From the NCBI RefSeq assembly GCF_006345805.1, contig NC_042999.1, positions 108,562,001 to 108,626,000 of the forward strand: DNA of 64,000 nucleotides, in the 5' to 3' direction. The notes below the pieces were generated by a model, which had not been told where the DNA came from, did no database searches, and saw nothing but the letters and a program-made list of their open reading frames with translations. A program made the position numbers and the translations under genes. This document shows positions 3,804-61,934 of this stretch, one piece after another. Each line of letters begins with the position of its first letter. The stretch's first letter is position 1. This DNA comes from Octopus sinensis (taxonomy: Eukaryota).

Positions 3804-4037
3804 TAAATTGTTGTAATTCCCAATTGACAGCTGACGAAAGGAGTCCATCAATGCAAGCTGTACAGAAAATACTGAATGTTTACATTGTAATATGTCAAGT
3901 ATTAAGAGCTATTTATTTGCCTGCCTTAGGAGGAACACTCATTTGAGACTAATGCAGATAATGGCTTCATGTTCTGTTGGCTAGTATTTGGTTGGATTAC
4001 ATCTAGCTTGTCTTAAAGTTATTTTCATAATATTGGT

Positions 4038-4247
4038 TTCAAATTTTGGCTCAAGGCCAGCAAGTTCAGGAGAGGGGTAAATCAATTACATCAACCCAAG
4101 TATTCAACTGGTACTTATTTTATTGCCCCCAAAAGGATGAAAGGCAAAGTTGACCTCAGTGGAATTTGAACTCAGAACATGAAGATAGACAAAATGCCAC
4201 TAAGCATTTCACCCAGCATACTAACAATTCTGCCAGCTCACCACCTT
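4038..4247 (-). mobile_element. tRNA-derived SINE family B, full length with ~20-bp TSD
   Basis: Flanked by agttattttcataatattggt (4017-4037) and agttatttcataatattggt (4248-4267). Confidence 0.9.
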
Positions 4248-9837: not shown

Positions 9838-10066
9838 AGAACTGGCAGAAACATGAGCATGCTGAGCGAAATGCTTAGCAGTACTTTGTCTGCAATTAAA
9901 TTCTGAGTTCAAATTCTGCCGAGGTCGACTTTACCTTTCATCCTTTCAGGGTCGATAAATTAAGTACCAGTTACACACTGGGATTGATGTGATTGACTTA
10001 ATCCCTTTGTCTGTTCTTGTTTGTCCCTTCTATGTTTAGCCCCTTGTGAGCAATAAAGAAATAAGA
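9838..10066 (+). mobile_element. SINE family B, tail type B2
   Basis: B head (gaaatgcttagc...ctgagttcaaattctgccgaggtcgac) + tail identical in type to 40101-40335. Confidence 0.9.
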
Positions 10067-17992: not shown

Positions 17993-18465
17993 GAAATGGT
18001 TTCGAATTTTTGCACAAGGTTAGCAATTTCAAAATAGGGGATAAGTTGCTTACATCGAACCCAGTGATCAGCTGGTACTTATTTTATTGACCCCCAAAAA
18101 GATGAAAGGCAAAATCAACCTCAAAATAATATTAGTTATAATAACAACAATCATTTCTATTATAGACATAAGGCCTGAAATTTGTTGCGATGGGGGTTAC
18201 TTGTCTATTATTGACCTCAGCACTCAACGGGTACATTTTTTTATCAACCCCAAAATTCTTTCTAAATCTGGTATACAGCCAGCAATTTTGAGGTAGGGGT
18301 CAAGTTGTTTATATTGACTCCAGGATATAACTTGTTGACTGGCACTGTATTTTACAGATCCCCAAAAGGGTGAAAGGCAAAGTTGACCTTAATGATACTT
18401 GAACTCAAAACAAGGTGCTAGAAGAAACACCACTAAGCATTTTTTCCATAATGCTAATGATGCTG
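17993..18465 (-). mobile_element. Three tandem SINE B fragments
   Basis: B 3' blocks restart at ~17993, ~18150 and ~18260; only the last retains the head (ctaagcattttttcc...gctaatga). Confidence 0.75.
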
Positions 18466-18894: not shown

Positions 18895-18957
18895 TAAATA
18901 TTAATAATATATTAATGAAATATTAATAATATTAATATTAATAATAATAATAATAAT

Positions 18958-19066
18958 AGTTTCTTATTTAGGCACAAGGCCAGAAACTTTGAGGAGAGAG
19001 GATTAGTGAATACATCATCCCCAGTATTTGACTGGTATTTTATTATATTAACCCTAAAAGGATAAG
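18958..19066 (-). mobile_element. SINE B 3' part
   Basis: ggcacaaggccag...ccccagtatttgactggta..aaccctaaaaggat. Confidence 0.7.
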
Positions 19067-24662: not shown

Positions 24663-25076
24663 ATCATCATCGTTTAGCGTCCGCTTTCCATGCTAGCATG
24701 GGTTGGACGGTTCAACTGGGGTCTGGGAAGCCAGAAGGCAGCACCAGGCCCAGTTTGATCTGGCAATGTTTCTACAGCTGGATGCCCTTCCTAACGCCAA
24801 CCACTCTATGAGTGTAGTGGGTGCTTTTTACGCGCCACTGGCACAGGTGCCAGACGAGTCTGGCAAACGGCCACGATCGGATGGTGCTTTTTATGTGTCA
24901 CCGGCACAGGGGCCAGGCGAGGCTGGCAACGGCCACGAATGGATGGTGCTTTTTACGTGCCACCGGCATGAGGCCAGTTGGGGCGGCACTGGCAACGGCC
25001 ACGAACGGATGGGGCTTTTTACGTGCCACGGCACCAGGCCAGTCGGGGCGGCGCTGGCAATGGCCACGTTCGGATC
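24663..25076 (-). mobile_element. Young 5'-truncated RTE-LINE 3' UTR with four ~62-66-bp repeat units
   Basis: CpG-rich; CCATGCTAGCATGG at 24688-24701; gtgcttttta anchors at 24821, 24884, 24946 and 25012. Confidence 0.92.
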
Positions 25077-25117
25077 AATATATATATATATATATATGGA
25101 AAGCAGACATTAAATGA

Positions 25118-25159
<42 letters not shown>

Positions 25160-25161
<2 letters not shown>

Positions 25162-25348
25162 CTGTTGTAATTTAGTCATCCATAGTCTGATATGATATTT
25201 CGGAATAATATTCTTTCTTCAGATATTCTTAAGATGGAGTCACTATTAGAAAACTGATTATAACAGCGACTCCATCTAAGAATATCTAAAGAAGGAATAT
25301 TATTCCGAAATATCATATCAGACTATGGATGACTAAATTACAACAGGT
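25160..25348. mobile_element. 189-bp near-perfect palindrome (foldback MITE-like)
   Basis: Arms 25160-25244 and 25265-25348 differ by 3 substitutions + 1 indel; 20-nt spacer; set in TA/CA microsatellite. Confidence 0.8.
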
Positions 25349-33844: not shown

Positions 33845-34045
33845 GGTGGTAAGCCAATAAAATTGTTAGTACACAAAATGCTTAGCAGCATTTCATCCAT
33901 CTTCCGTGATCAAATTCTACTGAGGTCACCTTTGTTTTTCATCCTTTCAGGGTCAATAGGATAAAGTACTAGTTGAGTACTGAGGTTACCCCTCCAATCC
34001 AAAATTTCAGGCTTTGTGCCTATAGAAGAAAGAATTATTATTATT
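33843..34045 (+). mobile_element. SINE B (tail B3) directly after (ATT)11
   Basis: aaggtggtaagcc...aaatgcttagc...ggctttgtgcctatagaagaaagaattattatt. Confidence 0.82.
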
Positions 34046-38636: not shown

Positions 38637-39442
38637 AACAGTGTTTTACAAAGCTTCTGCTAAGTTGTTACCTCTTTTAGGTACCATGTAACAGTACATC
38701 ATTATTATTGAGAAGTGTAGCTGCATCATTACTGATACACTTGGATTTAAATGTTAGTATGCAAATTTGTTAGATGAGCAATCTGAGTGAGGTAATCAGA
38801 GCCAATTCAAGGACCACCTATAAAGTTATTACCATATTTTCTAGCATACAAGTCAATGTGGTATATAGTGTTAACATTCAAGCATTGTCATTATGATTCC
38901 TAATCCTGCTGCATTTCACATGGGAATTTTTGGTCCTTCAAAGACATCTTGGTGTATAAGTTGACCAACCCATTTTGGTTTTAAATTTTAGTCTGAAAAA
39001 TTTGACCCGTATGCCAGAAAATACAGTATTGGAAACAGTAGATACTTCAAAGAAAATGCCTTGCAGCATGTATCACCATATGTCCTGAGTTAAAAATCTA
39101 CCAAAGTTGATTTTGACTTTCATCCTTCTGGGGCTTGGCAAAATAACTGCCAGTCAAATACAGGGGTTGATTTCATTCACTGTTCCTTTTCCTCTCAAAA
39201 TGTGTAGTCATGTACTTATGATAGAAATTATGATTATTACTATAAAGCACAATTTTTGCAATGTGTTTGCTTATCTAATTATATTAGGTGGACTTGTCTC
39301 CGTTGAAACTTGATATCCAGCTGTTATAATGACTTGAAGATAGTATTGAAATATATACTTGATGTACTACTCTGTCCTATGTTCCAATTCTGCTAAAGAT
39401 ACCTTAGATGTTTAAGTTTCTGGCATTCATAGTCATCCTAAT

Positions 39443-42060
39443 CATCATCATCATCACCACTACTATCCTCATCATCATCATCATCATTATCATCTTCATT
39501 ATTATTTCACATTAGTTTCTTCTCGTGCTTGCATGCATTGGACAGATCTTCTCTAGCACAGAGTTTTGCCACTTGTAGTGGTGCTTTCCTGAAGTTCTGT
39601 CTCCTGAGATTATTTTTTTATCACTTCATCCCATATCATATTCATCTTCTTTTTATCATAAGTCCATTGCACTTAGAATACTTCAACCTTCATTTTCAAT
39701 AACATACCTACCAGCTCACTCTTCTCTTTTGCACACAACATCTGATTCCGCTTACATCCTTCTTTTCTTCTCAGCAAATTAGTGCTCTGTTATTCATGCA
39801 TACTCAGTTTCATTTCATTTCTTTCCAGCCTTCACACACCCTCTGCATTCAATGCCCATTTTTCACTTTTGCATTTTACTACATTGGCATCACATGATTT
39901 GCCCTTCCAAAAAAGACAATCCCTTTGTTGCTAGCAGCGGTAGTAGTTCTTTGAACTTTTTCCATTCTTTGCAAGCATCTACCTTCACTGCTAAGTAGGT
40001 TACATAGGTAGAAGCTATCTGGAGCTTTTAGGGAGCCCTCCTGAGCATTTGAATAATTTATTTCCTGGGTACACTTATTTGTAACTACTCCTGTGTATCT
40101 TATTTCTTTACTGCCCACAAGGGGCTAAACATAGTGGGGACAAACAAGGACAGACAAAGGGATTAAGTCGATTACATCGACCCCAGTGCTCAACTGGTAC
40201 TTTATTTATCGACCCTGAAAGGATGAAAGGCAATGTCGACCTCGGCAGAATTTGAACTCAGAACGTAAAGACAGACGAAATACCGCTAAGCATTTCGCCT
40301 GGCGTGCTAACAATTCTGCCAGTTCACTGCCTTAATACTCCTGTGTATCTGCTATGTGCAAAGTATTTTACCATTAGTCTCCCTGTAATTACACTGTACC
40401 ACTTGCACACCCACATATTACAATATGTACAGCTTGCAGAATTGCTACTTTCATTTTCTTTGCATATTGAACAGACCCACTTCCCAGATGAGAGTAGAAT
40501 CCGATCTTCTTTCCTGCTAACCTAGATTTACTTAAAGAGCTTCTGATTTTAAGCTTTTATTTCATGCTTGAATTCAACTGTGAGAAACTAGGTATCAACA
40601 CCACAGTTCCCATGGAGTGTCATACATAAACTCCTCCATTATGACATAGAGAACTATAATAAACAAAAAGAGGTGAGAATTGAACCCTGACTAACACCTA
40701 CCTAAATGATAAATTACTTGCTTATTTCATTGCTAACTCTCATTTTTCTGACAGCATCTCTGTACAAGGCTTGCGCTGTTCTCATATTCATTTACATCTA
40801 ATTTTTTTGGTGACTATCAGACTAGAGCATGTGATTTTCTATCAGAGACCATCTCCACATTATCAAATGTTTGGTTTAGTAGTTTACTCTTAGCTAAGAA
40901 CCACTATAGCTGTCTCATCAGAAGAAGAGCATTGGTAGTGCTCTTTTTGTTGTAAACCTAAACTACATCTCATCTAATTTTACACCCAAATTGTATTATA
41001 ACTCGATTAATTTCATTATTTACTCCATCAGTTTGAAGTCTCTGTAATTCTTTTTTAGAGCATCTCCTTTGCCCTTGTAGTACAAGTAAGGGTTATTCCC
41101 TATGCTTTGGATTTCTCTGCCTTTATATCCTTAATGGGCTCCCCACTGTTAGGCATACTTGTGTTAGTACCTAACTACCATTCTCCTCATTCAACAACTC
41201 CTTCTCGTTTTGCTGTCTCCATATCTCCTCCTTTTTGATGTCAGTGAGTGTACCACTATCATTATGTCATTATGTAATACTTTTCTAGAATGATATCTCA
41301 ATTCATACTGAAAACGCTTCTTTGCAAATCAGAAAACTTCTAGATTGCAATGAAATTATCATTATGTCACAGAACCTTAGCAAACTTCTTACTAAGTATT
41401 TAATTTCTTGTTAAATATACCTGAAACCCATGATATGTGATATTATCCCTTGTTCCTTTCTTTCATTATTTCTAAGCATGTCTCAGCTATTATGAATTCA
41501 CCTACTGTACCATCCACCCACCATATCAACTTTTAATCTGGCTGGAACCTTGTTCCCTCCAGAGATCTGGTCGGTGATTCAAGGCAGACTGTCTTGCAGA
41601 AACTTCGAGCTGTTTCCTATGATAAAACCAGTAACTTCCTATTTCTCAGTAACTCTTCCTATGTGTCACCTATACTTCTTTGAATTTATATCTTACTAAG
41701 GAATCTTTCGTTGAGTTCTTACTCTAGTGTCATTGATCAATAGACTATACTGAGTGGCTATGTTAAGAAAAAAGAAACAACTTAGTGTTCACAACAATCT
41801 ATGTGTATTATTTCTTGGTGGGTATGAAATTAGATCTTTCTAGCACATTCATCTGCGTGGTAGGTAATCTTGCACATGAACAGTTTCCGGAGGATAATAT
41901 TGCAGAGGGTTGAGTCAGTTGTGTTCCAAAACTCTTGACATCCAGTGACACAATTAATTTCCTTTCATTCCATGTACCATAACCATAGCCTCCATACATG
42001 TCAGAATAGCACCATAGTTTTACCTAACACATCTATTAAAGTCACCAACAAGTTTGTTGT
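39443..42060 (-). mobile_element. RTE-clade LINE copy 3: old, ~2.6 kb, endonuclease to tail, interrupted by SINE B
   Basis: Decayed translations: VGDFN...YGGYGYGTWNE (APE, ~41960-42050), YKGKGDAL (41057-41080), VGVSQGSIL (~40680), SGKWVCSICKENESSNSASCTYCNMWV (PHD, ~40400-40480), PLLATKGL (~39920), (CAT)n tail. Confidence 0.8.
40101..40335 (-). mobile_element. Young SINE B2 with perfect 15-bp TSD
   Basis: tactcctgtgtatct at 40086-40100 and 40336-40350; CpGs retained. Confidence 0.96.
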
Positions 42061-42930: not shown

Positions 42931-42964
42931 AATTTTTTCTCAGTTACTACTCTCTTAGGTGAGT
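42931..42964 (+). other. Candidate 15-nt micro-exon (42944-42958) or recursive splice site
   Basis: ttttttctcAG|TTACTACTCTCTTAG|GTGAGT. Confidence 0.4.
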
Positions 42965-45264
42965 TGACTTCACTCCAGCTTATGAAGTCCACTTCTCCCC
43001 AATTCAGTATTTTATTTGGAGCTATTGTTCTCCCTGAGTTATTGCCATACTGATTATCTTTTGGTTTTGCTATTTATTTCACCCTCTTACACTGACATGC
43101 TGGTAACCTTAAGCTGATTTCTTTTTTCCTTTACTATTAAACATCTATAAATTTTAATTACTTTTGCTAAATTATTTATTAGTTTTATTCAAAATGTTCT
43201 TAGTTATTTTGATTAACTACAGTTCATTAGTGTTATGTATGTATACAAGACATCAAATTCTCTGATACACTATTAATAAACCAAACTATCCATGAAATGC
43301 ACTGGTTAGAATGAAATTTGATTTATAGTTTGTAATTTATTTCATAACTCATGTTATATATTTGTTAAATTTCCTCTAAATAATTAAACGATATGAAACA
43401 AAAACAATTTTTATTCAATTTATCTTTAGTCATGTTTATATGATTTTCGCTTTATACCACTATTATTCTTCTCTTAAATATATAAAACTCTTAATTATAT
43501 AACTAAATATTCTATACAACTGGTGTATTTTGACTAGATTTTGTTTAAATTTTGAAGTTATTTTTAAATTTCATAATTAAAACTGTTAATGACTTATATT
43601 TATTTACTGTAGCTATTTAGCATGTATTTGCTAGTGAGAGATTATTTATATCCCCAAATTTTCTAATTACCAGATTTTTATGAAGTTTTAATTTGTACCA
43701 GTAGGTTCTAAAGTTATGAAATAATCCAATCTCACCATCAAAGTTAACTAACTTCATTTCAGATTAACCTTTTCAACTTGTCAGATTTATGTGAAAGCAG
43801 TTCACTTCTGTTTCTCCTCGAAAATATGTTAGTTGTGAGAAATAAGAAATGCTTTCATTGTCTCTAAAAAGTGATTATTAAGATCTGTTAAGAAAACAAT
43901 TTAGATGTGAAGTTTATTTTTGCAACATTTCTTCGACAAATAATTTGAAGATTTTAATTATTAATATCATTACAAGATAGTATGCAAGGTGAAAGAATGA
44001 TTGGGAATATTATTTAGAAGTGGACACATAAGAGATTAGCGATCAGAGAATTTTGGGCTTTTTGTGATGTGATGATGCAATGTTGTAATGCAAGAAGACA
44101 TTTTAATTTGTGGAGCCATTCAGCCTATGTTATCAGAAGAAGGATACATTTGATAACGTCCTAAATACACAATGTCAACAAAAACTGGATGTTAACAAAG
44201 TAACATAGACGTGCTGTGCTGTATCAAGTTTTTTAAGACTAAAAAATAACAAGGTAAAATTAGATTAAATAGGGGTCAAGGTTGATGATATCAGCAAGTC
44301 AAACCTGATTGAACTTAAAACATGAACAATATGTAATCTCTGATTACCTTAATATAACAAAAGAGAAGCTAATGAATACATGGTAATCTTCAACAAAATG
44401 AGCCTATGTCAGTTAATTCTTCTGTTGCTTCATTATTTGCACAAAATGACACATAAAAAAAAAGTTGGTTTCTTTTTCCCTTTTTTTTTTAATTATCATT
44501 AATAATATTATTATTGAAAGCCAGGTCCACATAACTGATTCTAAAAATGAGAACAGTTTCTTTTTGTTGAAAGCACATGATGACATAAAACCTACAAAAG
44601 AGACAATAGATAAGGCTTTTATATATATATTTGACATATCCTGTTTTAAATAAACATCGACTAATATTTCAATACACACAACCCCATAGTAAGTAGGTAA
44701 GAAGTAAATTATAAGTGTTGTCAAAAAGCACTTATGTGCATGAGATGAGTAGAGGGAAGGAAGAGGTGGGGAGGCAGTTACTGATTTGTTGATAAAATAT
44801 TTTTGTGTATATTTTCACTTGAAAATAACTAGCTAATAAAATAGGGGCTTATTCAAATATTAGGTATTATATCACATTTGTACTGAAATAATATATTACT
44901 AGAAACAGGAGGAAAAACAACATAGAATTCATTAAGCTCTGTATGTGAGTGTGTGTGTGTGTGTGTGTGAGAGAGATAGATAGAGAGAGAGTAGGGTTGG
45001 AGTGAAGTTCATATAGATAGTATACATAATCCAATTGTATTTGGGAATTTAGGAAAAAAATTGTTATAGACTGAAAAAAAACTGGAGCAAAATGGACTGT
45101 CTCTTTGACTGTGTCTATTCTGTGTAGACATATGTGTTTACTGAAGATATGTTTATTATGAATAGCATTAAACAAGGAATGTGACTCAATTCCTAGTTTG
45201 ACATATGGAATTTTATTGTATTTTATTTTGTTTTCTTAATGAAGATATTTCATATATATATATA

Positions 45265-45918: not shown

Positions 45919-47834
45919 TGTGCCAAGCAGAAGCACCACTGATGCTATATTTCTGGTATTTCTGGAGAAATCTCTAGCCAAAGATAAACCTCTGTACTTG
46001 GCTTTTGTTGACTTGGAGAAAGCCTTTAACAGAGTTCCCTAATCCTTTATCTGGTGGTCAATGTGGAAACTGGGGATAGACAAGTGGTTGTTAAGAGCTG
46101 TAAAAGCCCTGTTCAGAGATGCTGCGAGTAAAGTGAGGGTTGCCAACGAGTATAGTGAAGAATTCTGAGTAGAAGTAGGGACTCACCAAGGATCAGTCCT
46201 CCACCAATTCTTATTCATTATAGTCCTCCAGGCAATAACAGAGGGATTCAAGACAGGCTGCCCCTGGGGGCTCCTCTACACTGATGACCTTGCTCTAATA
46301 GCTGAGTTACTGACAGAACTAGAGACAAATTTGAGGGTGTGGAAACAAGGTCTAGAATCGAAGTACCTTAGAGTTAACCTTGCAAAAACCAAAGTCTTAG
46401 TAAGTAGGAAGGCTGTCAAAACACAAGCCCCTTCAGGTAGATGGCCCTGCCTGATCTGTAGAGAAGGTGTGGGTACTCCATACAATGTACCTGGTGTAAG
46501 CTATGAATACATAAAAGGGGCAGCAATATCAAAGGAAGAAGGTTAACCGGGAAGATAGTCTTTGTGTGTGGCAGATGCACAGGGACAACAAACACTGAAG
46601 ATGTACAGCAAACAGATTCCATCACATGCCAGGGTGAAAAAGTAGAAATAATTAATAGCTTCTGCTATCTAAGCGACCAAGTCTGTAGTGGGGGTGATTG
46701 CTCTGAGAGTGTAGCAGTTAGAATAAGAATAGCCTGGGCAAAGTTCAGGGAGCTCCTACCTCTGCTGGCAACTAAAGGCCTCTTGCTCAGGATGAAAGGT
46801 AGCCTGTATGATGCATGTGTGTGAACTGCCATGCTACATGGCAGTGAAACATGGACCATGACTGCTGAGGACATATGTAGGCTTGAAAGAAAGGAAGCTA
46901 GTATGATCCGCTGGATGTGTAATGTCAGTGTGCATACAAGACAAAGTGTAAGCATCCTTAGAGAAAAGTTGGACATAAGAAGCATCAAAAATGGTGTGCA
47001 AGAGAGACAACTGCCCAGGTATGATCATGTGTCATGTATGGATGATGACAGCTGTGTGAAGAAGTGCCACTCCCTAACTGTGGGAGGAACATGTGGAAGT
47101 GGTAGACCGAGGAAGACATGGGACAAGGTGACAAAGCATAACCTTCGAACAGTGGGCCCCACAGAGGCAATGACAGGAGACCGAGACCTTTGGCGATATA
47201 CTGTGATTGAGAAGACCTGGCAACTAAAGAGAGATCACAGCCATGCATGTCCAGCCCAGTTAAGAGTACCCCTGATGCATCAGGCAATATGATATACTTG
47301 AGAAAACCAATACCATAGTTGTGGCCAGGACCACCTGACTGGCTCCCATGATGGTGGCACATAAAAAGCACCATCCAAACATGGCTGATGCCAGTACCCC
47401 TGACTGGTTCCCGTGCTGGTGGTACATAAAAAGCACTATCCAAATGTGATCAATGCCAAGACCACCTGGCTGGTTCCCATGCCAGTGAATCATAAAAAGC
47501 ACCATCCAAACATGGCTCATGCCAGTACCTGCTGACTGGCTCCTGTGCCGATGGCACGTAAAAAGCACCATCTAAACATGGCCCCCATGTCAGTGGCACA
47601 TAAAAAGCACTATCTGAACATGATTGATGCCAGGCCCACCTGACTGGCTCCTGTGCCAGTGGCACATAAAAAGCATCCACTACACTCTCTGAGTGGTTGG
47701 TATTAGGAAGGGCATCCAGCTGTAGAAACCTTGCCAGATCAGGTTGGAGCCTGGTGCAGCTGCTGGCTCTCCAGACCTCAGTCAAACAGTCCAATCTATG
47801 CCAGCATGGAAAACAGACGTTAAACAATGATGAT
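45919..47834 (+). mobile_element. RTE-clade LINE copy 2: RT domain, PHD insert, ORF2 C-terminus, 3' UTR minisatellite, (GAT) tail
   Basis: PSRSTTDAIF...AFVDLEKAFNRVP, HQGS, LLYTDDL, LRVNLAKTKV, FCYLSD, LHGSETW, GRPRKTW; in-frame stops and frameshifts, so inactive. Confidence 0.95.
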
Positions 47835-48150: not shown

Positions 48151-48182
<32 letters not shown>

Positions 48183-48463: not shown

Positions 48464-48679
48464 AAGGTGGTGAGCTGGCAGAATTGTTAGCGCACTGGAC
48501 AACATACTTAGCGGTGTTTTGTCTGTCTTTACGTTCTGAGTTCAGATTCTGCCAAGGTCGACTTTGCCTTTCATCCTTTCAGGGTTGATAAATTAAGTAC
48601 CATTTGCATACTGGGGTCGATCTGATCGACTGGCCCCCTCCCCCAAAATTTCGAGCCTTGTGCCTAGAGTAGAAAAGAA
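48464..48679 (+). mobile_element. SINE B (tail B3) with 13-bp TSD
   Basis: tattctgctgctc at 48451-48463 and 48680-48692. Confidence 0.95.
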
Positions 48680-49351
48680 TATTCTGCTGCTCTTCACCCC
48701 TCCTTTTCTGCACTGTCTCATACTCTCTTCTCAAGCTCATATGTATCATTGGTCACTTTCCACCCTTTATCTACTACTCATTTCATGCACACCTCAACCC
48801 TAGCCATTTTGTACAGTTGTCACCTACTCTTCCCTGTCTTTCCTCCTTTAACACTTTTTCTTCATTATATTCACTCACTAACACTTTCCTCTTCTCTGAC
48901 TAGCTCCCACATAGAAAATGGACATTAGATGATGACAGTGATGATAACAATGACTTCACAGTGATTGTTTGCAGTTTCAGTACTTTAGGGAATTTACTAT
49001 TAATAATTTTTTTGTTTTTTTGTTGGTTTTTATTAGCAAAGTTATATTGCGTAGATTTATAATGGAGAAGAAAGCAGACCTATTGATGTCCATATCTTTT
49101 TTGCTTTGTTTTTTCACCAAAGAGATTATCAGTAATTTTAAACTCACAAGGATTACACTAATGTTTGTTGATTTATCTCTTGAATTTATAATTGTATGTG
49201 TATTACATTTAGTCATTAAGTTTATATATTTTTATGTATGTTTATTCTTTGTTATTCTATTTTTATGTATGCTTCTTCTATACTGTTATTTAAAGATTTT
49301 CCTATCAAGAGCATAATAACTGAAGAAATAAGATTTAATTTATTATTAAAA

Positions 49352-49385
49352 GCTTTTTTTCTTTTCTTTTATTTCTTAGGTAAGT
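49352..49385 (+). other. Candidate recursive-splicing ratchet point (zero-length exon)
   Basis: gctttttttcttttcttttatttcttAG|GTAAGT: uninterrupted pyrimidine tract, YAG and consensus donor, outside any recognised repeat. Confidence 0.55.
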
Positions 49386-50803
49386 GGATATTTAAATTCT
49401 CTCAAAGATTACAAGTTTATGAAATCAAGCAATTTTGCCTATAGTAGTCCTCTACAGATTGGTATGTATGAGAAATTGTCTTTCTACTTTGCTACAAGTT
49501 TTCAATTTGTTTCTTTTTTCTCTCATTCTCCACAATGTTCAGTTGCTACATAAAATCTAGTATTTATAAAAAGAAAATATGACAATTTTATTTGATATTG
49601 TTTATCTAAGTATTGGTTGACCTGTTCAAACAGTTAACCTCATCCTGTGTATTTCTATCTACATATTCGATTATCATTAAGGACCATTTGTTATTTATAT
49701 CTGTATCTTGGCCTCTATAAAGCTGAGATAGAAGGCTGCAATAACTTCTCTCAAAAACAGAGATGTGTAATTGGCTGAACTTCAAAATTTAGTATTACGT
49801 ATTATTAGGGGTAGTAGTGTCAAATACAATACCAATACCTAGTAGTATTTGGTCCTTGAGGACAAACAAACCAGTCTGAGTATTTGAAAATCATTTAATA
49901 GCTATACTTTGTGTGCATATTTACACGTGTTAGTGTGTGTATATCAGTCAGACAGAGAGAGTGGGAAAGATCAAATAAAGAAAACTACATTGGAAATTAG
50001 CCACTTGATTTTACAAACCATCCTTAAAGATCATTTTGCATTCATACACAAAAACCTGATTCCTCTAGAAAAGAATAATATTCCATTTCCTGCCAGTTCT
50101 AAATGTATGTATGCTTACATTGTATGTTACTATCAATTGAAATAACATTCTGATTTCTGGAACAATCTTCACCTAACAAGTGGTAAAATGATAGGAAAAT
50201 AGGAACTTAAAGAGTGAATAATTTACTTACTTCAAAGAGATCTAATCACATAATCAGTTATCAGATACATTTGAGATATCTATAGACACGTTGACACCTA
50301 GCCACTATAATGAATTATGGATCTGATTTGAAGGGACTTTACACCTTCGCATGATGATTCCTTGTCATGCCAACTCGCTTAAATGTCAGCTTTTCTGATT
50401 TGGTCATATTATCTGCCTGCCTGAAATCAGCTTCCTAAAATGTTTAAGTGTGAGCTTAAAAGGAGAAGACTGCCTTGTCAATGAAGAGCAAGTCTTTGAA
50501 TTTAGTTATGCTTCATGCCTGCCTACAACATCTGTTAATATCCCCTGCAGACCTTTCTCTACCTGCAATTAGGGCTTGAAGGGAAGAAATTTTATTTATT
50601 TATTTTACCTTTTATAACAGTGTGTGACGAAGACATTGCAAATGAGCTAGCAGCCATTTTAACCCACAAATATATACACCTCTGCAAAAACCAAATATCA
50701 GCTACCCTTATTCCACTGTAATATTTGTTGACTTTTCAGATTTCAGATTTTTAAAAATATAAAACAGCTCACTGATATAAGGAAAATACTTACAATATCA
50801 TGC

Positions 50804-50835
<32 letters not shown>
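50804..50835. repeat. (TTTC)n microsatellite
   Basis: Direct reading. Confidence 0.95.
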
Positions 50836-51920
50836 GTTATATCTCTTTTACTGTACAGCCTATCTCTGCATCAATTTATATAGCAGTAATATTAGGTATT
50901 CCTACTGAAAAAAATTAACCTCTTCAAAGGAAAAAGAAAAGCAAACATTTCATTCTTTTGTGTCGAACATGTTGATGTTATTACTGAACATAATTATACA
51001 ACACTCTATTTAACATGTCTGCGGCATTCCCCAAGGAAATAATATACAAGCCCAACCTCATAAATAAAAGAATTCTGAATGATTCTTCTAAGTGACCTGA
51101 CTTCACTTTGAATTTATTTATTACTGAATCACAATTAAATATTTAGATGTTAATCATCTATATTCAGTTGAAAGTTTTAGCTGTTAATTAACTGTTTTGT
51201 TCATGGAATGTTTGAAGTAAATCATTATCATTAGTTTTATTCTATTGATCAACAGTCTTTTCTTCTTTCTAAGTAAGCAAGTTTCAAAATTATTTTCTAC
51301 ATCTTTTAATCATCATTCTTTCAAGGTGGATATTAATTTATTCTCTAAGTTCTCAAATTCACATAAATTAATCTTAAAATGTGTATTTGCAGCTGAAGAA
51401 CTAGAACATTTATGTTAAGAAGTGAAGTCTGCACTCAAGTTTAAATTAAATAAGAATAAAATCTTATTTATGTCATATTTGAGTGCTCAAGAAATTAAAT
51501 TTTTTTTCTAAATAAATCTAGTTAAATATGAAAATATTTCATTTCAAGATACTTCTTTAAGAGTTATTTGTATCGGGTAAAATATTTGTTTTAATACTTT
51601 CAACTTCAGAAGATATTCATCCTTTGAGAGTTGATACAATAATTACTTCTTAAGTCCTAGGGTTGATAGGATCAGCTGTTCCAACCCCACCCCCACCAAA
51701 TGAGTGACTTTGTGGTTAAATTAGAAATCAATATTTTTGACTCAAAGAGATTTTAGGTTGTGGTTTATCAAATATTTCTGCTGTATTTTGGCTGTAAATT
51801 CACAAGGTATTTTCATTCAACTCACTCACAGATTTATTGGTTTCCTTGCATCATTTGTATATTTCATCAGTATACACACAAAGATACAAACACATACAAA
51901 GTGAGCTTCACACAGTTTCT

Positions 51921-56052: not shown

Positions 56053-59019
56053 ATCAGGCTATTGTAAAGTTTTGAAAACAAATGTTTAAATTTATATGAT
56101 TGTAGTTGTTTTCTTTGCAGTAGTTGAAATAAATTATATATACTGAAAGATTTTTAGGAATATATATTATATTGTTCTCATATATTTCTTTTGAAATCAT
56201 CTTTATAGTTAAGCTAATCAGTTATTTAATATATAGAAAAATGATACTATTATAAATTAAAAAAAAAACCCTTATTGGATTAGCACATTTTTACATTTCA
56301 TAATAAAAGTTAACTTTTATAGTTATTTCAGAATAAATCCCTTTCTTTTAATGTATTATTTAATTGTGGTGTGTGTGAAAGAGAGAGAAAGAATGAGTGT
56401 GAGAGAGAATGTATGGGTATGTATGTGTACATGCTTACACGTGGGTTTGCTTATAAATAGATAAAATAAATAATCTTGATTCTCTTAATGGATGTAGTCA
56501 TATGTTGAAATTATATTTTCATTCTTATTTATATATGTATATTTCTTTACCATTTTTCATAGTTACTCTACTTCCACTATGTTTGTGGGATTTCACTCAC
56601 ATGCTGTCATTAATAGCATTACTATCAAAATAAAACTATTGTATCATTATACTAAAGCTTGCCCTAGTAAAACCTCTCTCTATTACTCACACACAAGCAC
56701 ACACTTCACTACTGCTGGAGTAGCAGGAGCATTTGTAGATAAGCTATATTTGAAAAGAAGCTGACTGTGTATGTGATAGTTAATACAGGAAGTTCTTTGT
56801 AGCTGCCCCACCCCCTGATACTTTCTTCTTTGCCTCTCTATTACCACTACCCACTGTTCTTACAGGAGGTGTGGGTCTAGCTCAAGTACCAGTCTATCTG
56901 CTTTCCTGTCTGTCAGTAAGCTCCTCCTAACTAACTCAATGAATTCTGTCAACTTCACCTCTGGCACTACAGCTTACAATACCACTATTTTGTACCCCAC
57001 CGATGGCTGTATGTATTCATCAGTTTTCATTCTGTGCTAACATGTTTCCTTTCTTAACAAGTAATATACGGTTGCTTTATTTAATAACATGAAGTAAGAA
57101 AACAAACTTATGTGAATTCCTTTTGGTTCATTGGCAATGAGAGCAACCAACCACTGGTTTCGGAGAAAGAAAAAAGTTTATTTAAAGTTATTCACCTGAA
57201 AGTTATATTCTAAATGGGATAAAAGAAAAACCCCAAACAAAAGCAAAAACTAAATAGACAAACGCTAAAAACATAGAAGAAGGTGGATCCATATAAATAA
57301 TAAAATGACAAATAATACTGGAACTATTTGGATCTTTAAAAAGAAAAGAAAAGAAGCAAAGCATCAAAATACTTTCCCAAGGAATTTTATAAATTGAATG
57401 GATTTATTAAATGAAAATCTTCCTCATTACATGTTGAAGTTGTTTTCAAAAGCAAAGGTATATGTATACACATTTCCAGGTGTCCTCGGAATTTTATTTG
57501 TTATTTCAATGAATATTTTTAATAACAATTCATACAGATTCAACTTGTAAAAAAAAGAAGCTTTAAAAAATCAGTGTTATATATTTTCAAATGTAATTGA
57601 AAATTTGCAAACAAGTAATATTTACTAGAAATATTTATTTTAATTATACTCTTTCAAAATACACTTCAAAAAATTATTTTGATTCAAGAAAAAAAACCTT
57701 AAACTTCACAGATACTTATGGGCATTATGAAAGAGATGTGAAAACCGTACCAAACTTTTAATAGCCAGCTCACAGCGAGTATGTTTTGCATTTAGATATT
57801 AAGATAAAGGATTTTAAAGCTTTCCAAATATAATAGCAAACTTTGGTTTCCAAATTTCAAATCAGAAAAAAAAGGGGAAAGAACCAAATATCACAGGGGG
57901 AAAAAAAAAACAGTTGGATCATTTTGTTTTTTACATACTCACACACAAACACCCACCCTATTAAAAAACAATGAGAAGAAAGAGAGAGAGAAAGAGGAGA
58001 AAGAAGAAAAATAAGTAAACTAATTCACATGTTTATAGTTTTATAAATTTTAAAAAAAATTCTAAACCTCTTTATTATCTTTACTTAATGAGCTGAAGTT
58101 TAATAACACAATATTATCTCACACTTTAAAGCCATAAGGAAAGTCATTCAAGTTGTACCCAGGCCAACTGTTGTTACCTGTCTTGTTCTCATTAACTCAG
58201 TCACCTAGTCTACTTAATTGTTTTTTGTTTTCCTTTTCCTCTACTTCCCCCTTCTCTCTCTCTTTCTCAAATTAAACTTATCAGGGCTTCTATGCTGGTG
58301 ATATAGTTTGATTTAATCACTTACTTTAATAGATGACTAAACTGCTATTGCTAATCTCTTTTACAGACTAAGTAAATTGTACATTTAACTAGTTGGATGT
58401 TATAGTGCCTTTTGAAAGGGTCTTATAATCATTTTTCTGTTGGTTCGACAACAGAAAAATATGGTCAATTTCATCTGATAGGATACCTTTCAACTGCTAA
58501 GTGGAAATTATATGAGGGCAGTAATTATTAATTTTCGTTGTTTTGATTTTCTTACCACCTGCACACAGGTATGTAGGTATTTTAAAGAAACAGTCTGATA
58601 GGTTTCATCATTTTTGTAATTAGTGCCTTAATAACATTATGTTAAATTTATAAAATAATAACAATAAATAAGTTTAAGGAGTTGACATTTTAAAGAAGTT
58701 AATGCAGTATTAATTATTGAAAACTGAACTAAGTATAAAAACATTTCCAAACACTACTTTTTTGAAACAGGTTGCTGCACTTCTGACTTGTTGCATTTAC
58801 ATACTGTTACTTGTTTAAAGTATTTACAGCCTCATCTGTCGCTACTTCTAGCATGGATAATGCATCACTATACGTATCTAGTAAAATATAACTTACAAAA
58901 TTATTTCTTGTGGTAACAACTTAAGACATATAACTCAATTATCGAAATAATTATTCACTCGTATCATAAAAGGTGTTTTTGTCTTTCTTATTTTTTCTTA
59001 CTCCTTTAGAGAACTATAC

Positions 59020-59764: not shown

Positions 59765-61193
59765 ATGGGTAATAAGTCTTCATTACTCTATGAACGACAG
59801 GCTGAGTTATCAGGTGAAAGACGAGATCGAAGCTGGTCTTTTACAGGCAATATGGGTTCACCAACATTGTCTGGTTTAAAAGCTTCAAGAAGTCGAGCAA
59901 TGTCTTTGTCTCAAAATCCTAGGCAATCTGGTAATTCCCAGAAACACCTTAGGCTACCTGGTCACTTACATATATCTAGTCCATTGGAAATACAATCAAA
60001 AATTAATTCCATGGATTCTATGCGCTTAGTATCTAGCAGTTCTTTAACTAATGTTAATCAACCACATTCATGGACTCTTGGAAAATCTGATGCATGGGAT
60101 TCACCATGCATCAAGAATCACCATGCAAGAAATGCTAATACTCAACAACAACAACAATTCCAAAATTGGTCAAGCAAGTATGCCACCAATAAAAAGCTGG
60201 ACTTGCAAAATGAGAAGAAAGTAAGCATTAAAAAGCGATCAGCTCATGCAAGCGATAGCAACAAACAACCTGTTTGTTCTTCCCACCAGAATTCTGTACA
60301 AATGCAGTGTTGTTCTGATGATGTGTTAGATATAAAAGAAGATATTCTCTATGAAGGATTCAGACCTCGAACTAACTCAACATCAATCATAGAAATGGGT
60401 AGGAAACATCGCAGTCGTGTTGTAATGGGAGCTGCCAGTGCTAATCTTCGAAGACAGCTACATACAAGCCATACAGCCATTGACAAAAATTCTCAAGATT
60501 CTCCCAAAAATATGAATCATTGTGCTGGAGATTATGTTGAACTTGATCCTCGGCAAACAATGTTTCATGAGCAACAGAATTTTACCAATGAACAAGTATA
60601 CTTGCGGAAAGAAGGCAGATCTAGGGCAATGAATGAAAATAAGACTATAGATGATGTTTGTTTTCAACTGCCACCAACAAACACTTCTAGGACTACTCTT
60701 ACACCAAAACTTTGGGCAGGTAAAACTCTTCTTCCAGATATTCATGAAGAAAAAATTCTAAGTTCTAGTGTGCCAAATTGCAATTATGACTCCTTACTTA
60801 AGAATATTCCACAACAGAAGAGTCCAGGTATTTCTCCACTTACTCATGGCATTTCTTCAGTGAGAAACACTGATTTTATGAGGAAAAGAAGTTGTAGCAT
60901 ATCACATACTCCAGAATTTAGTGCACATCAGCAAATGCATTGGAATCTACCTCCAAATGCATTTGGAGAAGTTAATAACCGAGAAATTCTCATTCATTAT
61001 AGCCCATCTTCGGTGCGCAAATTTCCTAGAAAATTATCTGTTCCAATATTAATGACACCTAAAACTAGAATTGTTCCGGATAAGGAACGACTGTGGAATT
61101 ATAATGTGACTCTTGGTGATTCTTGTCCTAATCTTACCATTTCATCAAATAATAGCCCTGGACATGGACTTTACCTGAGCCAGAACAATAAAG
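59765..61193 (+). CDS. Large coding exon (476 codons + 1 nt) of an unidentified host gene; Ser/Asn/Gln-rich, probably disordered N-terminal region, N-myristoylation-type start MGNKSS
   Basis: Stop-free frame of 485 codons in very AT-rich DNA where no other non-repeat ORF exceeds ~125 aa. Good start context aaaATGG; in-frame upstream stop at 59702. Possible acceptor ttatag| at 59750. Donor AAAG|GTAAAC at 61194, followed by T-rich intron-like sequence. No recognisable globular domain. Confidence 0.88.
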
Positions 61194-61406
61194 GTAAACT
61201 TCTTTATTTAATTTTCCTTTAATAAATTAGAAAATTATAACTTGCATTGAAATCACCTTTGTATCCTTTTTTCTTAATGCAGCAAAATAATTTTGATATA
61301 TATTTTAGTGCTACCTGGTAGAAGATGACGCTGAAGAGCAGAAATTTTAATGTCAATATGCATACATGATTTTTCAATATTTTTTATTTTTTAAATGATA
61401 CTAGAG

Positions 61407-61466
<60 letters not shown>
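61407..61466. repeat. (ATT)20 microsatellite
   Basis: Direct reading. Confidence 0.98.
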
Positions 61467-61468
<2 letters not shown>

Positions 61469-61934
61469 GAAAGCAAGTGAGCAGAATTGTTAGCACACTG
61501 AACAAAATGCTTAGGGACATTTCTTCCAGCTTTATGTTCTGGGTTCAAATTTTACCAAGGCTGACTTTGCCTTTCTTCTTTTAGGGTCAAGAAGATAAGT
61601 GCCAGTTGAGTACTGGAGTTGATATTAATCAACTAGCTCCGCTCCCTAAATTTCAGGTCTTTTGCCTATAGTAGAAAGGATTATTATTATTATTATTATA
61701 ATTGTTAAGGCAATGAACTGTCAGAATCATTAGCATGCCAGGCAAAATGCTTAGCAGCATTTCGTCCCTCTTTACATTCTGAGTTCAAATTCCACCAAGG
61801 TCACCTTTGCCTTTCAGCTTTCAGAGTCAATTAAATAAATACCAAGTATGCACTAAGGTCAATGTAATCGACTTAATCTTCTCCCCCAAGCTGCCCTTGC
61901 ACAAAAATTTGAAATCCTTATTATTATCATTATA
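61467..61934 (+). mobile_element. Two tandem SINE B copies (61467-61698 tail B3; 61706-61934 tail B1)
   Basis: Each has gcagaat..ttagca..aaatgcttag..gttcaaatt head and an (ATT) tail. Confidence 0.88.

What the first reader, a model, noticed from the sequence alone, without database searches (positions are those of the whole stretch)
49352..49385. Textbook recursive-splicing ratchet point on the same strand as the downstream gene
Seen: a ~26-nt almost pure pyrimidine tract, TAG, then directly the full donor consensus GTAAGT (AG 49378-79, GT 49380-81), in non-repeat DNA ~10 kb upstream of the coding exon. Established: Py-AG|GT ratchet points (zero-length exons) remove long introns stepwise in Drosophila and in long vertebrate genes. 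Inference: much of this window is a long + strand 5' intron processed recursively. I am not aware of this being characterised in cephalopods. In my by-eye scan the minus strand gave only one weaker site of this type (~62065).
Basis: partly seen in the sequence, partly recalled or inferred. Interest (0 to 1): 0.7.

Follow-up and report, generated by a model that had tools for sequence, protein, structure and literature searches.

The report
Candidate recursive splice site, unverified
The sequence really contains a near-perfect "acceptor joined to donor" splice motif 10.4 kb upstream of a gene's first coding exon. Motifs this good should arise by chance hundreds of times in an octopus-sized genome, and nothing available here shows that this one is transcribed, conserved or used.

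Summary
The motif is at the stated coordinates on the + strand. It is a 25-nt tract with one purine (49353-49377), AG at 49378-79, then GTAAGT at 49380-85. It scores highest of all 404 AGGT sites in the window, counting both strands.

It is locally unusual: about 0.013-0.023 sites this strong are expected per 64 kb. Scaled to a genome of about 2.5 Gb, that is roughly 500-1000 chance sites.

The downstream gene is real. It has a 1.43-kb first coding exon (ATG at 59765) with a donor conserved in two relatives.

Nothing shows an upstream exon or + strand transcription through 49380. No transcripts or close relatives could be reached. The only genomic relative is 49% identical in protein and aligns only in the coding exon.

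One Drosophila hallmark is missing: TT at -5/-6 is CT here.

My estimates:
- Chance juxtaposition with no proven role: about 0.6.
- Genuine recursive site: about 0.2.
- Ordinary boundary of an unannotated exon: about 0.12.

The recursive-splicing reading can be neither confirmed nor refuted without RNA data. If it were real, it would be a new member of a known kind in a lineage where I found no paper on recursive splicing.

The parts
49353..49377 (+). Polypyrimidine tract, 25 nt with one purine (A49371). It is 19/20 Y in the 20 nt before the NAG.
   Evidence: Only 0.15% of 20-nt windows on this strand are >=19/20 Y. The acceptor score of 8.3 is in the top 0.16% of all AG sites, 12 of 7432.
49378..49379 (+). 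The AG of the putative 3' splice site. Position -3 is T, -5 is C and -6 is T.
   Evidence: TT at -5/-6 is found in 99.5% of Drosophila ratchet points (Duff et al., 10.1101/006163). Here it is CT.
49380..49385 (+). GTAAGT, the full consensus donor hexamer placed directly after the AG.
   Evidence: As a donor (TAG|GTAAGT) it sits at the 99.7th percentile of + strand GT sites. GTAAGT occurs 12 times on + and 17 times on - in the window.
49334..49343 (+). Branch-point-like yTnAy matches (TTAAT and TTTAT). Their A residues lie 41 and 37 nt upstream of G49379.
   Evidence: Such matches are common in 67% A+T DNA, so this is weak evidence. Drosophila ratchet-point branch points lie at -36 to -21.
49462..49467 (+). 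Nearest downstream donor-like site, TTG|GTATGT, 82 nt after the AG. It could close an 82-nt 'RS exon' or an ordinary non-coding exon (49380-49461).
   Evidence: It reaches only the 95th percentile of GT sites. My arithmetic gives about a 40% chance of one this good within 200 nt.
42957..42966 (+). Second + strand AG|GTGAGT, with 16/20 Y upstream.
   Evidence: score 12.2. About 0.4-0.7 such sites are expected per window, so it fits chance.
58567..58576 (+). Third-ranked AG|GT (CACAG|GTATGT), 1.2 kb upstream of the ATG. It could be the donor of a short 5'UTR exon.
   Evidence: score 10.7. About 1.5 are expected by chance. The exon role is inference only.
59765..61194 (+). First coding exon of the downstream gene. 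It starts MGNKSS..., ends at donor AAAG|GTAAAC and encodes about 477 aa.
   Evidence: The ORF is. Homologues P0001 and P0002 cover 100% and 99% of the ORF at 49% identity. They diverge after ...NKGK. A G|GTAAx donor sits at the same codon in the window, L001 and L002. The MGNKSS start is also present in the distant P0003.

Best explanation
The most likely reading is a chance juxtaposition. A T-rich tract ending in TAG happens to be followed by GTAAGT, in A+T-rich (67%), T-skewed non-coding DNA upstream of, or in the 5' region of, an uncharacterised octopod gene.

The motif would be a competent splice signal if it were transcribed. No evidence places it in a sense-strand intron or shows that it is used or conserved. 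On present evidence it is a motif match, not a demonstrated ratchet point.

Shown: the sequence, its rank in the window and its chance expectation. Inferred: the scaling to the whole genome and the lack of function.
For: (1) About 0.013-0.023 sites this strong are expected per 64 kb on both strands. With a genome of about 2.3-2.8 Gb (my own knowledge), that is roughly 500-1000 chance sites. This is at least comparable to the number of true recursive sites known in any animal: 197 in Drosophila, about 400 candidate junctions in human brain and ten events reported in mice (abstract list).

(2) Each half-site is common in the window. There are 12 acceptor-like sites at least this strong and 104 donor-like hexamers at least this strong. 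SINE copies carry even stronger acceptor-like sequences.

(3) The second- and third-ranked + strand sites fit chance, with 0.7 and 1.5 expected.

(4) There is no sign of an upstream exon or promoter. CpG observed/expected is 0.20 throughout, and the only CpG-rich patch is a TE copy. tblastx against the relative finds only the coding exon. No acceptor is conserved in front of the ATG.

(5) The Drosophila hallmark of TT at -5/-6 (99.5% of ratchet points) is absent.

(6) Even in Drosophila, only 6% of introns longer than the shortest recursive intron (11.3 kb) are recursively spliced.
Against: The site ranks first of 404 AGGT sites in the window. Both half-sites are near-optimal, and a branch-point-like sequence sits at a workable distance.

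It is on the same strand as the only gene in the window, in locally unique DNA.

The top three AG|GT sites are all on the + strand. That is not significant: the chance that two further sites share the first one's strand is 0.25.

Strong-donor hexamers are slightly rarer on + than on - (GTRAGT 26 vs 37). That is the direction expected for a transcribed sense strand, but it is not significant.

If octopods use recursive splicing as often as flies do, a site this strong inside a long sense intron would more likely be real than not.
Confidence: 0.6

Rival explanations
1. It is a genuine recursive splice site, either a zero-length exon or an RS-exon type. The gene would have a non-coding first exon upstream of 49353, possibly outside the window.

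The upstream exon would first be spliced to AG49379. That rebuilds a donor (exon end|GTAAGT), which is then spliced to the acceptor of the ATG exon 10.4 kb further on. The long 5' intron would thus be removed in at least two steps.
For: The motif is near-optimal on both halves and ranks first of 404 AGGT sites, with only about 0.01-0.02 expected per window. It is on the same strand as the gene. The 10.4-kb segment length lies inside the Drosophila range of 2.6-63.6 kb.

A branch-point-like TTAAT/TTTAT lies at -41/-37, and a possible RS-exon donor lies at +82. First introns are the longest and are the usual home of recursive sites.
Against: There is no evidence of any upstream exon, of transcription through the site, or of conservation. 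Position -5 is C, not T. The downstream donor is only at the 95th percentile. The genome-wide chance expectation is in the hundreds. The ATG exon has no strong, conserved acceptor.
Confidence: 0.2
2. It is an ordinary splice site of an unannotated exon, and the other half of the motif is there by chance. Two forms are possible. (a) GTAAGT is the donor of a non-coding first exon that ends at 49379, making 49380 to about 59750 a plain 10.4-kb 5'UTR intron. (b) AG49379 is the acceptor of an 82-nt non-coding cassette exon (49380-49461) closed by TTG|GTATGT.
For: TAG|GTAAGT is at the 99.7th percentile as a donor, and the acceptor score is in the top 0.16%. A usable donor lies 82 nt downstream. The ATG exon has possible acceptors 126-755 nt upstream of the ATG.
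Against: There are no transcript data. The window holds about 100 donor-like and 12 acceptor-like sites of equal strength, nearly all of them presumably unused. No promoter-like feature lies just upstream.
Confidence: 0.12
3. This concerns the origin of the tract, not its function, and it is compatible with the best explanation. The pyrimidine tract would be the decayed A-rich tail of an old retroposon inserted on the minus strand. That is how antisense Alu elements supply polypyrimidine tracts for cryptic acceptors in primates (my own knowledge).
For: On the minus strand the tract reads AAGAAATAAAAGAAAAGAAAAAAAG. The window is full of SINE and LINE copies.
Against: No other copy of the adjoining sequence exists in the window. 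No convincing target-site duplication was found.
Confidence: 0.08

Closest known systems
Drosophila zero-nucleotide ratchet points (Ubx, kuz, osp, fz; Burnette et al. 2005; Duff et al. 2014/2015, 10.1101/006163)
   Same: It has a strong polypyrimidine tract and an AG joined directly to a consensus GTAAGT donor. It is on the sense strand of a nearby gene. The putative segment of 10.4 kb lies within the Drosophila range.
   Different: TT at -5/-6 is present in 99.5% of fly ratchet points but is CT here. The fly sites are defined by junction reads, saw-tooth coverage, lariats and conservation, and none of these is available here. It is not known that the site lies in an intron at all.
Vertebrate recursive sites with RS-exons (Sibley et al. 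2015; reviewed in PMC5126111)
   Same: It has the YAG|GT core and a possible downstream competing donor (GTATGT at +82) that could define an RS-exon. It would lie in a first (5') intron.
   Different: As far as I know, vertebrate sites lie in very long first introns of long, mostly neuronal genes, and they are conserved. Here the intron length, the gene length and the conservation are all unknown. The downstream donor is no better than chance.
Cryptic or decoy splice-site pairs and stochastic intronic splicing (discussed in 10.1101/2024.12.11.627982)
   Same: It is a strong consensus match in non-coding DNA that may be used rarely or never.
   Different: This is a description rather than a defined family. 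It too needs RNA evidence.

Membership tests
Zero-nucleotide ratchet point (Drosophila type) | Juxtaposed strong 3' splice site (Py tract + YAG) and 5' splice site (GTRAGT) around AG|GT | tested here: met
   19/20 Y, TAG|GTAAGT, ranked first of 404 AGGT sites in the window.
Zero-nucleotide ratchet point (Drosophila type) | TT at positions -5 and -6 of the acceptor (99.5% of fly ratchet points) | tested here: not met
   One search shows C at -5 and T at -6. It may be specific to flies.
Zero-nucleotide ratchet point (Drosophila type) | Lies inside a long intron (>=11 kb in flies) on the sense strand | not testable with these tools
   There is no transcript or annotation for this gene. No upstream exon was detectable.
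Zero-nucleotide ratchet point (Drosophila type) | Exon-to-ratchet-point junction reads, saw-tooth nascent RNA coverage and lariats | not testable with these tools
   No RNA-seq is accessible. The Logan contigs of the homologue are genomic: they end in microsatellites and are collinear with L001.
Zero-nucleotide ratchet point (Drosophila type) | Sequence conservation of the site above that of the flanking intron | tested here: inconclusive
   The only relatives are 49% identical in protein. The 10 kb upstream in L001 has no alignable DNA and no comparable site: its best is AG|GTGAGT with 11/20 Y at L001 position 1401. No closer species could be reached.
Vertebrate RS-site with RS-exon | YAG|GT core | tested here: met
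   TAG|GT.
Vertebrate RS-site with RS-exon | Downstream 5' splice site that defines a short RS-exon | tested here: inconclusive
   TTG|GTATGT lies at +82 and is at the 95th percentile of GT sites. One this good is expected by chance about 40% of the time.
Vertebrate RS-site with RS-exon | Located in a very long first intron of a long gene | not testable with these tools
   The gene's extent is unknown. Only one coding exon lies in the window.

The most novel reading that the evidence does not exclude
The site is a working recursive splice site in the long 5' intron of a lineage-restricted octopod gene. It would be the first recursive site described in a cephalopod, or in any lophotrochozoan. 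That would support the idea that stepwise removal of long introns at Py-AG|GTAAGT elements is ancestral to bilaterians and is used in the intron-rich cephalopod genome.
Probability: 0.2. Interest if true: 0.45.

Novelty: not a real feature. Interest (0 to 1): 0.2.

Why it matters
If RNA data showed the site in use, it would extend recursive splicing from flies and vertebrates to cephalopods. It would also give a first example for a genome-wide survey in animals with very long introns and large nervous systems. That would be a useful but expected extension of a known mechanism.

As it stands, it is one motif match. It neither changes what is known nor makes an open question testable. The same genome-wide RNA-seq survey could be run without it.

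Tried and rejected
1. Conservation. I looked up the window's 485-aa product (not on record) and fetched the homologues' loci. BLASTN and tblastx show that only the coding exon aligns. The site region has no match in any fetched locus.

2. Transcript evidence from Logan contigs. L002-L011 turned out to be genomic contigs. They end in (TC)n, (TA)n or poly-T and are collinear with L001, including the sequence past the donor.

3. A conserved acceptor in front of the ATG. The alignment of three species shows conservation only from about -6 of the ATG onward.

4. Promoter or CpG island upstream. There is none. The only CpG-rich patch (24751-25250) is a TE copy.

5. Exact-match scan for the site and a relatives scan of the JGI metagenome contigs. 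Both found nothing.

6. Gene identity, as a guide to whether this is a long neuronal gene. There is no Pfam match and no PDB match. A profile search of 1.84 billion representatives found only P0002 and one weak relative, P0003. The gene stays uncharacterised.

7. Antisense retroposon tail as the origin of the tract. No second copy and no target-site duplication were found.

8. Strand asymmetry as a proxy for transcription. T exceeds A on + around the site, and GTRAGT is 26 on + versus 37 on -. Both point the expected way, but they are not significant and the method is not validated for this taxon.

Full report
**Observation**

The + strand reads ...AAAAG CTTTTTTTCTTTTCTTTTATTTCTT AG|GTAAGT GGATATT. 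The tract at 49353-49377 is 25 nt with a single purine (A49371).

A regular-expression scan finds AG|GTRAGT three times on the + strand and once on the - strand:

| Strand | Position | Pyrimidines in the 20 nt before NAG |
|---|---|---|
| + | 38309 | 12/20 |
| + | 42957 | 16/20 |
| + | 49378 | 19/20 |
| - | 22914 | 12/20 |

The ATG of the downstream exon is at 59765, 10,385 bp from the site. Within the window the sequence around 49380 is unique. The nearest repeat is a multi-copy SINE at about 48470-48690.

**Is it more than chance?**

I scored every AGGT on both strands with simple acceptor and donor weight matrices. The consensus frequencies came from memory and serve only for ranking.

- The site ranks first of 404, with a score of 17.0. 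The next two are + 42957 (12.2) and + 58567 (10.7).
- The expected number of sites scoring at least 17.0 per 64 kb, both strands, is 0.013 (order-3 Markov simulation), 0.020 (order 5) and 0.023 (empirical independence of half-site scores taken from all AG and GT positions).
- For the strict motif, the counts give about 0.002-0.006. This uses 0.15% of 20-mers at >=19/20 Y and four AGGTRAGT sites.

So the motif is unusual for one window, roughly a 1-in-50 event. Octopus genomes are about 2.3-2.8 Gb (my own knowledge), so the same rate predicts roughly 500-1000 equally good sites by chance.

The second and third sites are fully explained by chance, with 0.4-0.7 and 1.5 expected. That the top three share the + strand is not significant (p = 0.25 for the two followers).

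**Anatomy of the site**

- As a donor, TAG|GTAAGT is at the 99.7th percentile of + strand GT sites.
- As an acceptor, the site is among the 12 best of 7432 AG sites.
- Branch-point-like TTAAT and TTTAT lie 41 and 37 nt upstream of the AG.
- The nearest downstream donor-like site is TTG|GTATGT at 49462, 82 nt after the AG. It could close an RS-exon or an ordinary 82-nt exon. It is only at the 95th percentile, and one this good is expected within 200 nt about 40% of the time (my arithmetic).
- The Drosophila hallmark of TT at -5/-6 is present in 196 of 197 ratchet points. Here it is CT.

**The downstream gene**

The ORF 59765-61222 (485 aa, starting MGNKSS...) has only two homologues among 5.8 billion proteins: P0001 (100% of the query covered) and P0002 (99%), both at 49% identity. 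A profile search of 1.84 billion representatives adds one weak relative, P0003. It shares the MGNKSS start and the RPRTNSTS and KILSSSVP motifs. There is no Pfam or PDB match.

The homologues diverge right after ...NKGK. All three genomic sequences have G|GTAAx at that codon. The real exon is therefore 59765-61194 and is followed by an intron.

The start codon is conserved, so everything upstream is 5'UTR, intron or intergenic DNA.

A TE-derived ORF at 46831-47289 is 69% identical over 46% of its length to a hypothetical protein of Octopus vulgaris. Together with the SINE, which I recognise from memory as the octopus type, this fits an octopod origin. The gene itself has no annotated Octopus protein in the database.

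**Is the site in a sense-strand intron?**

This is the crux, and I could not settle it.

- The window's protein is not on record.
- The Logan contigs carrying P0002 are genomic, not transcripts. They begin and end in microsatellites or poly-T, and they stay collinear with the ENA contig L001 beyond the exon's donor.
- Window and L001 align only in the coding exon, by BLASTN and by tblastx.
- Upstream of the ATG, three species share only about 6 nt. No conserved acceptor is visible, although moderate acceptor-like sites lie 126, 563 and 755 nt upstream of the ATG.
- CpG observed/expected is 0.20 across the window. The only CpG-rich patch (24751-25250) is a copy of the TE also seen at 47.3-47.8 kb, so no promoter island marks an upstream first exon.
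- Two scans of JGI metagenome contigs found neither the site nor relatives of the gene.
- Compositional hints (T > A on + around the site; fewer GTRAGT on + than on -, 26 vs 37) point towards + strand transcription. They are weak and not validated for this taxon.

**Weighing the explanations**

Known recursive sites number 197 in Drosophila, in introns of 11.3-133 kb. Only 6% of introns longer than the shortest recursive intron are recursive. Of 160 predictions filtered by conservation, 91 were later confirmed. [quoted passage not shown]

Set against several hundred chance sites per octopus genome, a motif-only candidate of unknown context has a modest prior. I put it at about 0.2 for a genuine recursive site. 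An ordinary boundary of an unannotated exon gets about 0.12: either the donor of a first exon ending at 49379, or the acceptor of an 82-nt exon. No splicing role gets about 0.6.

The idea that the tract is the A-tail of an antisense retroposon found no support. It concerns origin only.

**Comparison with known systems and novelty**

In form, the site is what a Drosophila ratchet point or a vertebrate RS-site looks like, apart from the -5 position. Membership in either family is defined by RNA evidence and conservation, and neither could be tested.

No paper in the library treats recursive splicing in cephalopods or molluscs. A validated site would therefore be a first for the lineage, but it would be a new member of a known kind.

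On present evidence I classify it as a real sequence motif without a demonstrated feature behind it, of low interest. The decisive data are total or nascent RNA-seq, mapping of the gene's transcription start, and an alignment of Octopus species at this locus.

Noticed in passing
window 59765-61194 (+): The 'downstream gene' is an uncharacterised, apparently lineage-restricted protein. It starts with MGNKSS (an N-myristoylation-type start) and has several RxRxxS/T-like motifs (RDRSWSFTG, RPRTNSTS, RKRSCSIS) and a conserved LLPDIHEEKILSSSVPNC block. It has no Pfam or PDB match. Only three relatives turned up in searches of 5.8 billion protein sequences and 1.84 billion cluster representatives, and no annotated Octopus protein was among them.
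   Followed up: partly
window 48470-48690, with copies near 4026-4207, 9871-9998, 18012-18443, 18952-19063, 33902-34035, 39079-39182, 40166-40293, 51616-51735, 61530-61685, 61743-61873: A multi-copy SINE of about 200 bp that looks tRNA-derived, present in both orientations. In + orientation it carries a very strong acceptor-like sequence (TTTCATCCTTTCAG|GG). That sequence outscores or matches the candidate site's acceptor half.
   Followed up: partly
window 46831-47292 (+), 47324-47827 and 24700-25250: A GC-rich TE block. It holds a reverse-transcriptase C-terminal fragment that is 69% identical over 46% of its length to an Octopus vulgaris hypothetical protein. It also holds 66/131-bp tandem sub-repeats. 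A related copy at 24.7-25.2 kb is the only CpG-rich patch in the window (observed/expected 0.89 against 0.20 overall), which suggests a younger or unmethylated copy.
   Followed up: partly
Both are within chance expectation. The second lies 1.2 kb upstream of the ATG and could be the donor of a short 5'UTR exon.
   Followed up: partly
whole window: CpG is strongly depleted (observed/expected 0.20) at 33% G+C, and T slightly exceeds A on the + strand (22170 vs 20860). Microsatellites are abundant: (TG)14 at 48155, (TCTT)8 at 50804, (ATT)20 at 61407, and many (TA)n and (CA)n runs that produce spurious long ORFs.
   Followed up: no
L001 (ENA ERZ21867824, contig of 472 kb): A record filed as a metagenome assembly holds a 472-kb contig that carries the homologue of this animal gene. 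The contig is therefore host (probably cephalopod) DNA and not microbial.
   Followed up: no
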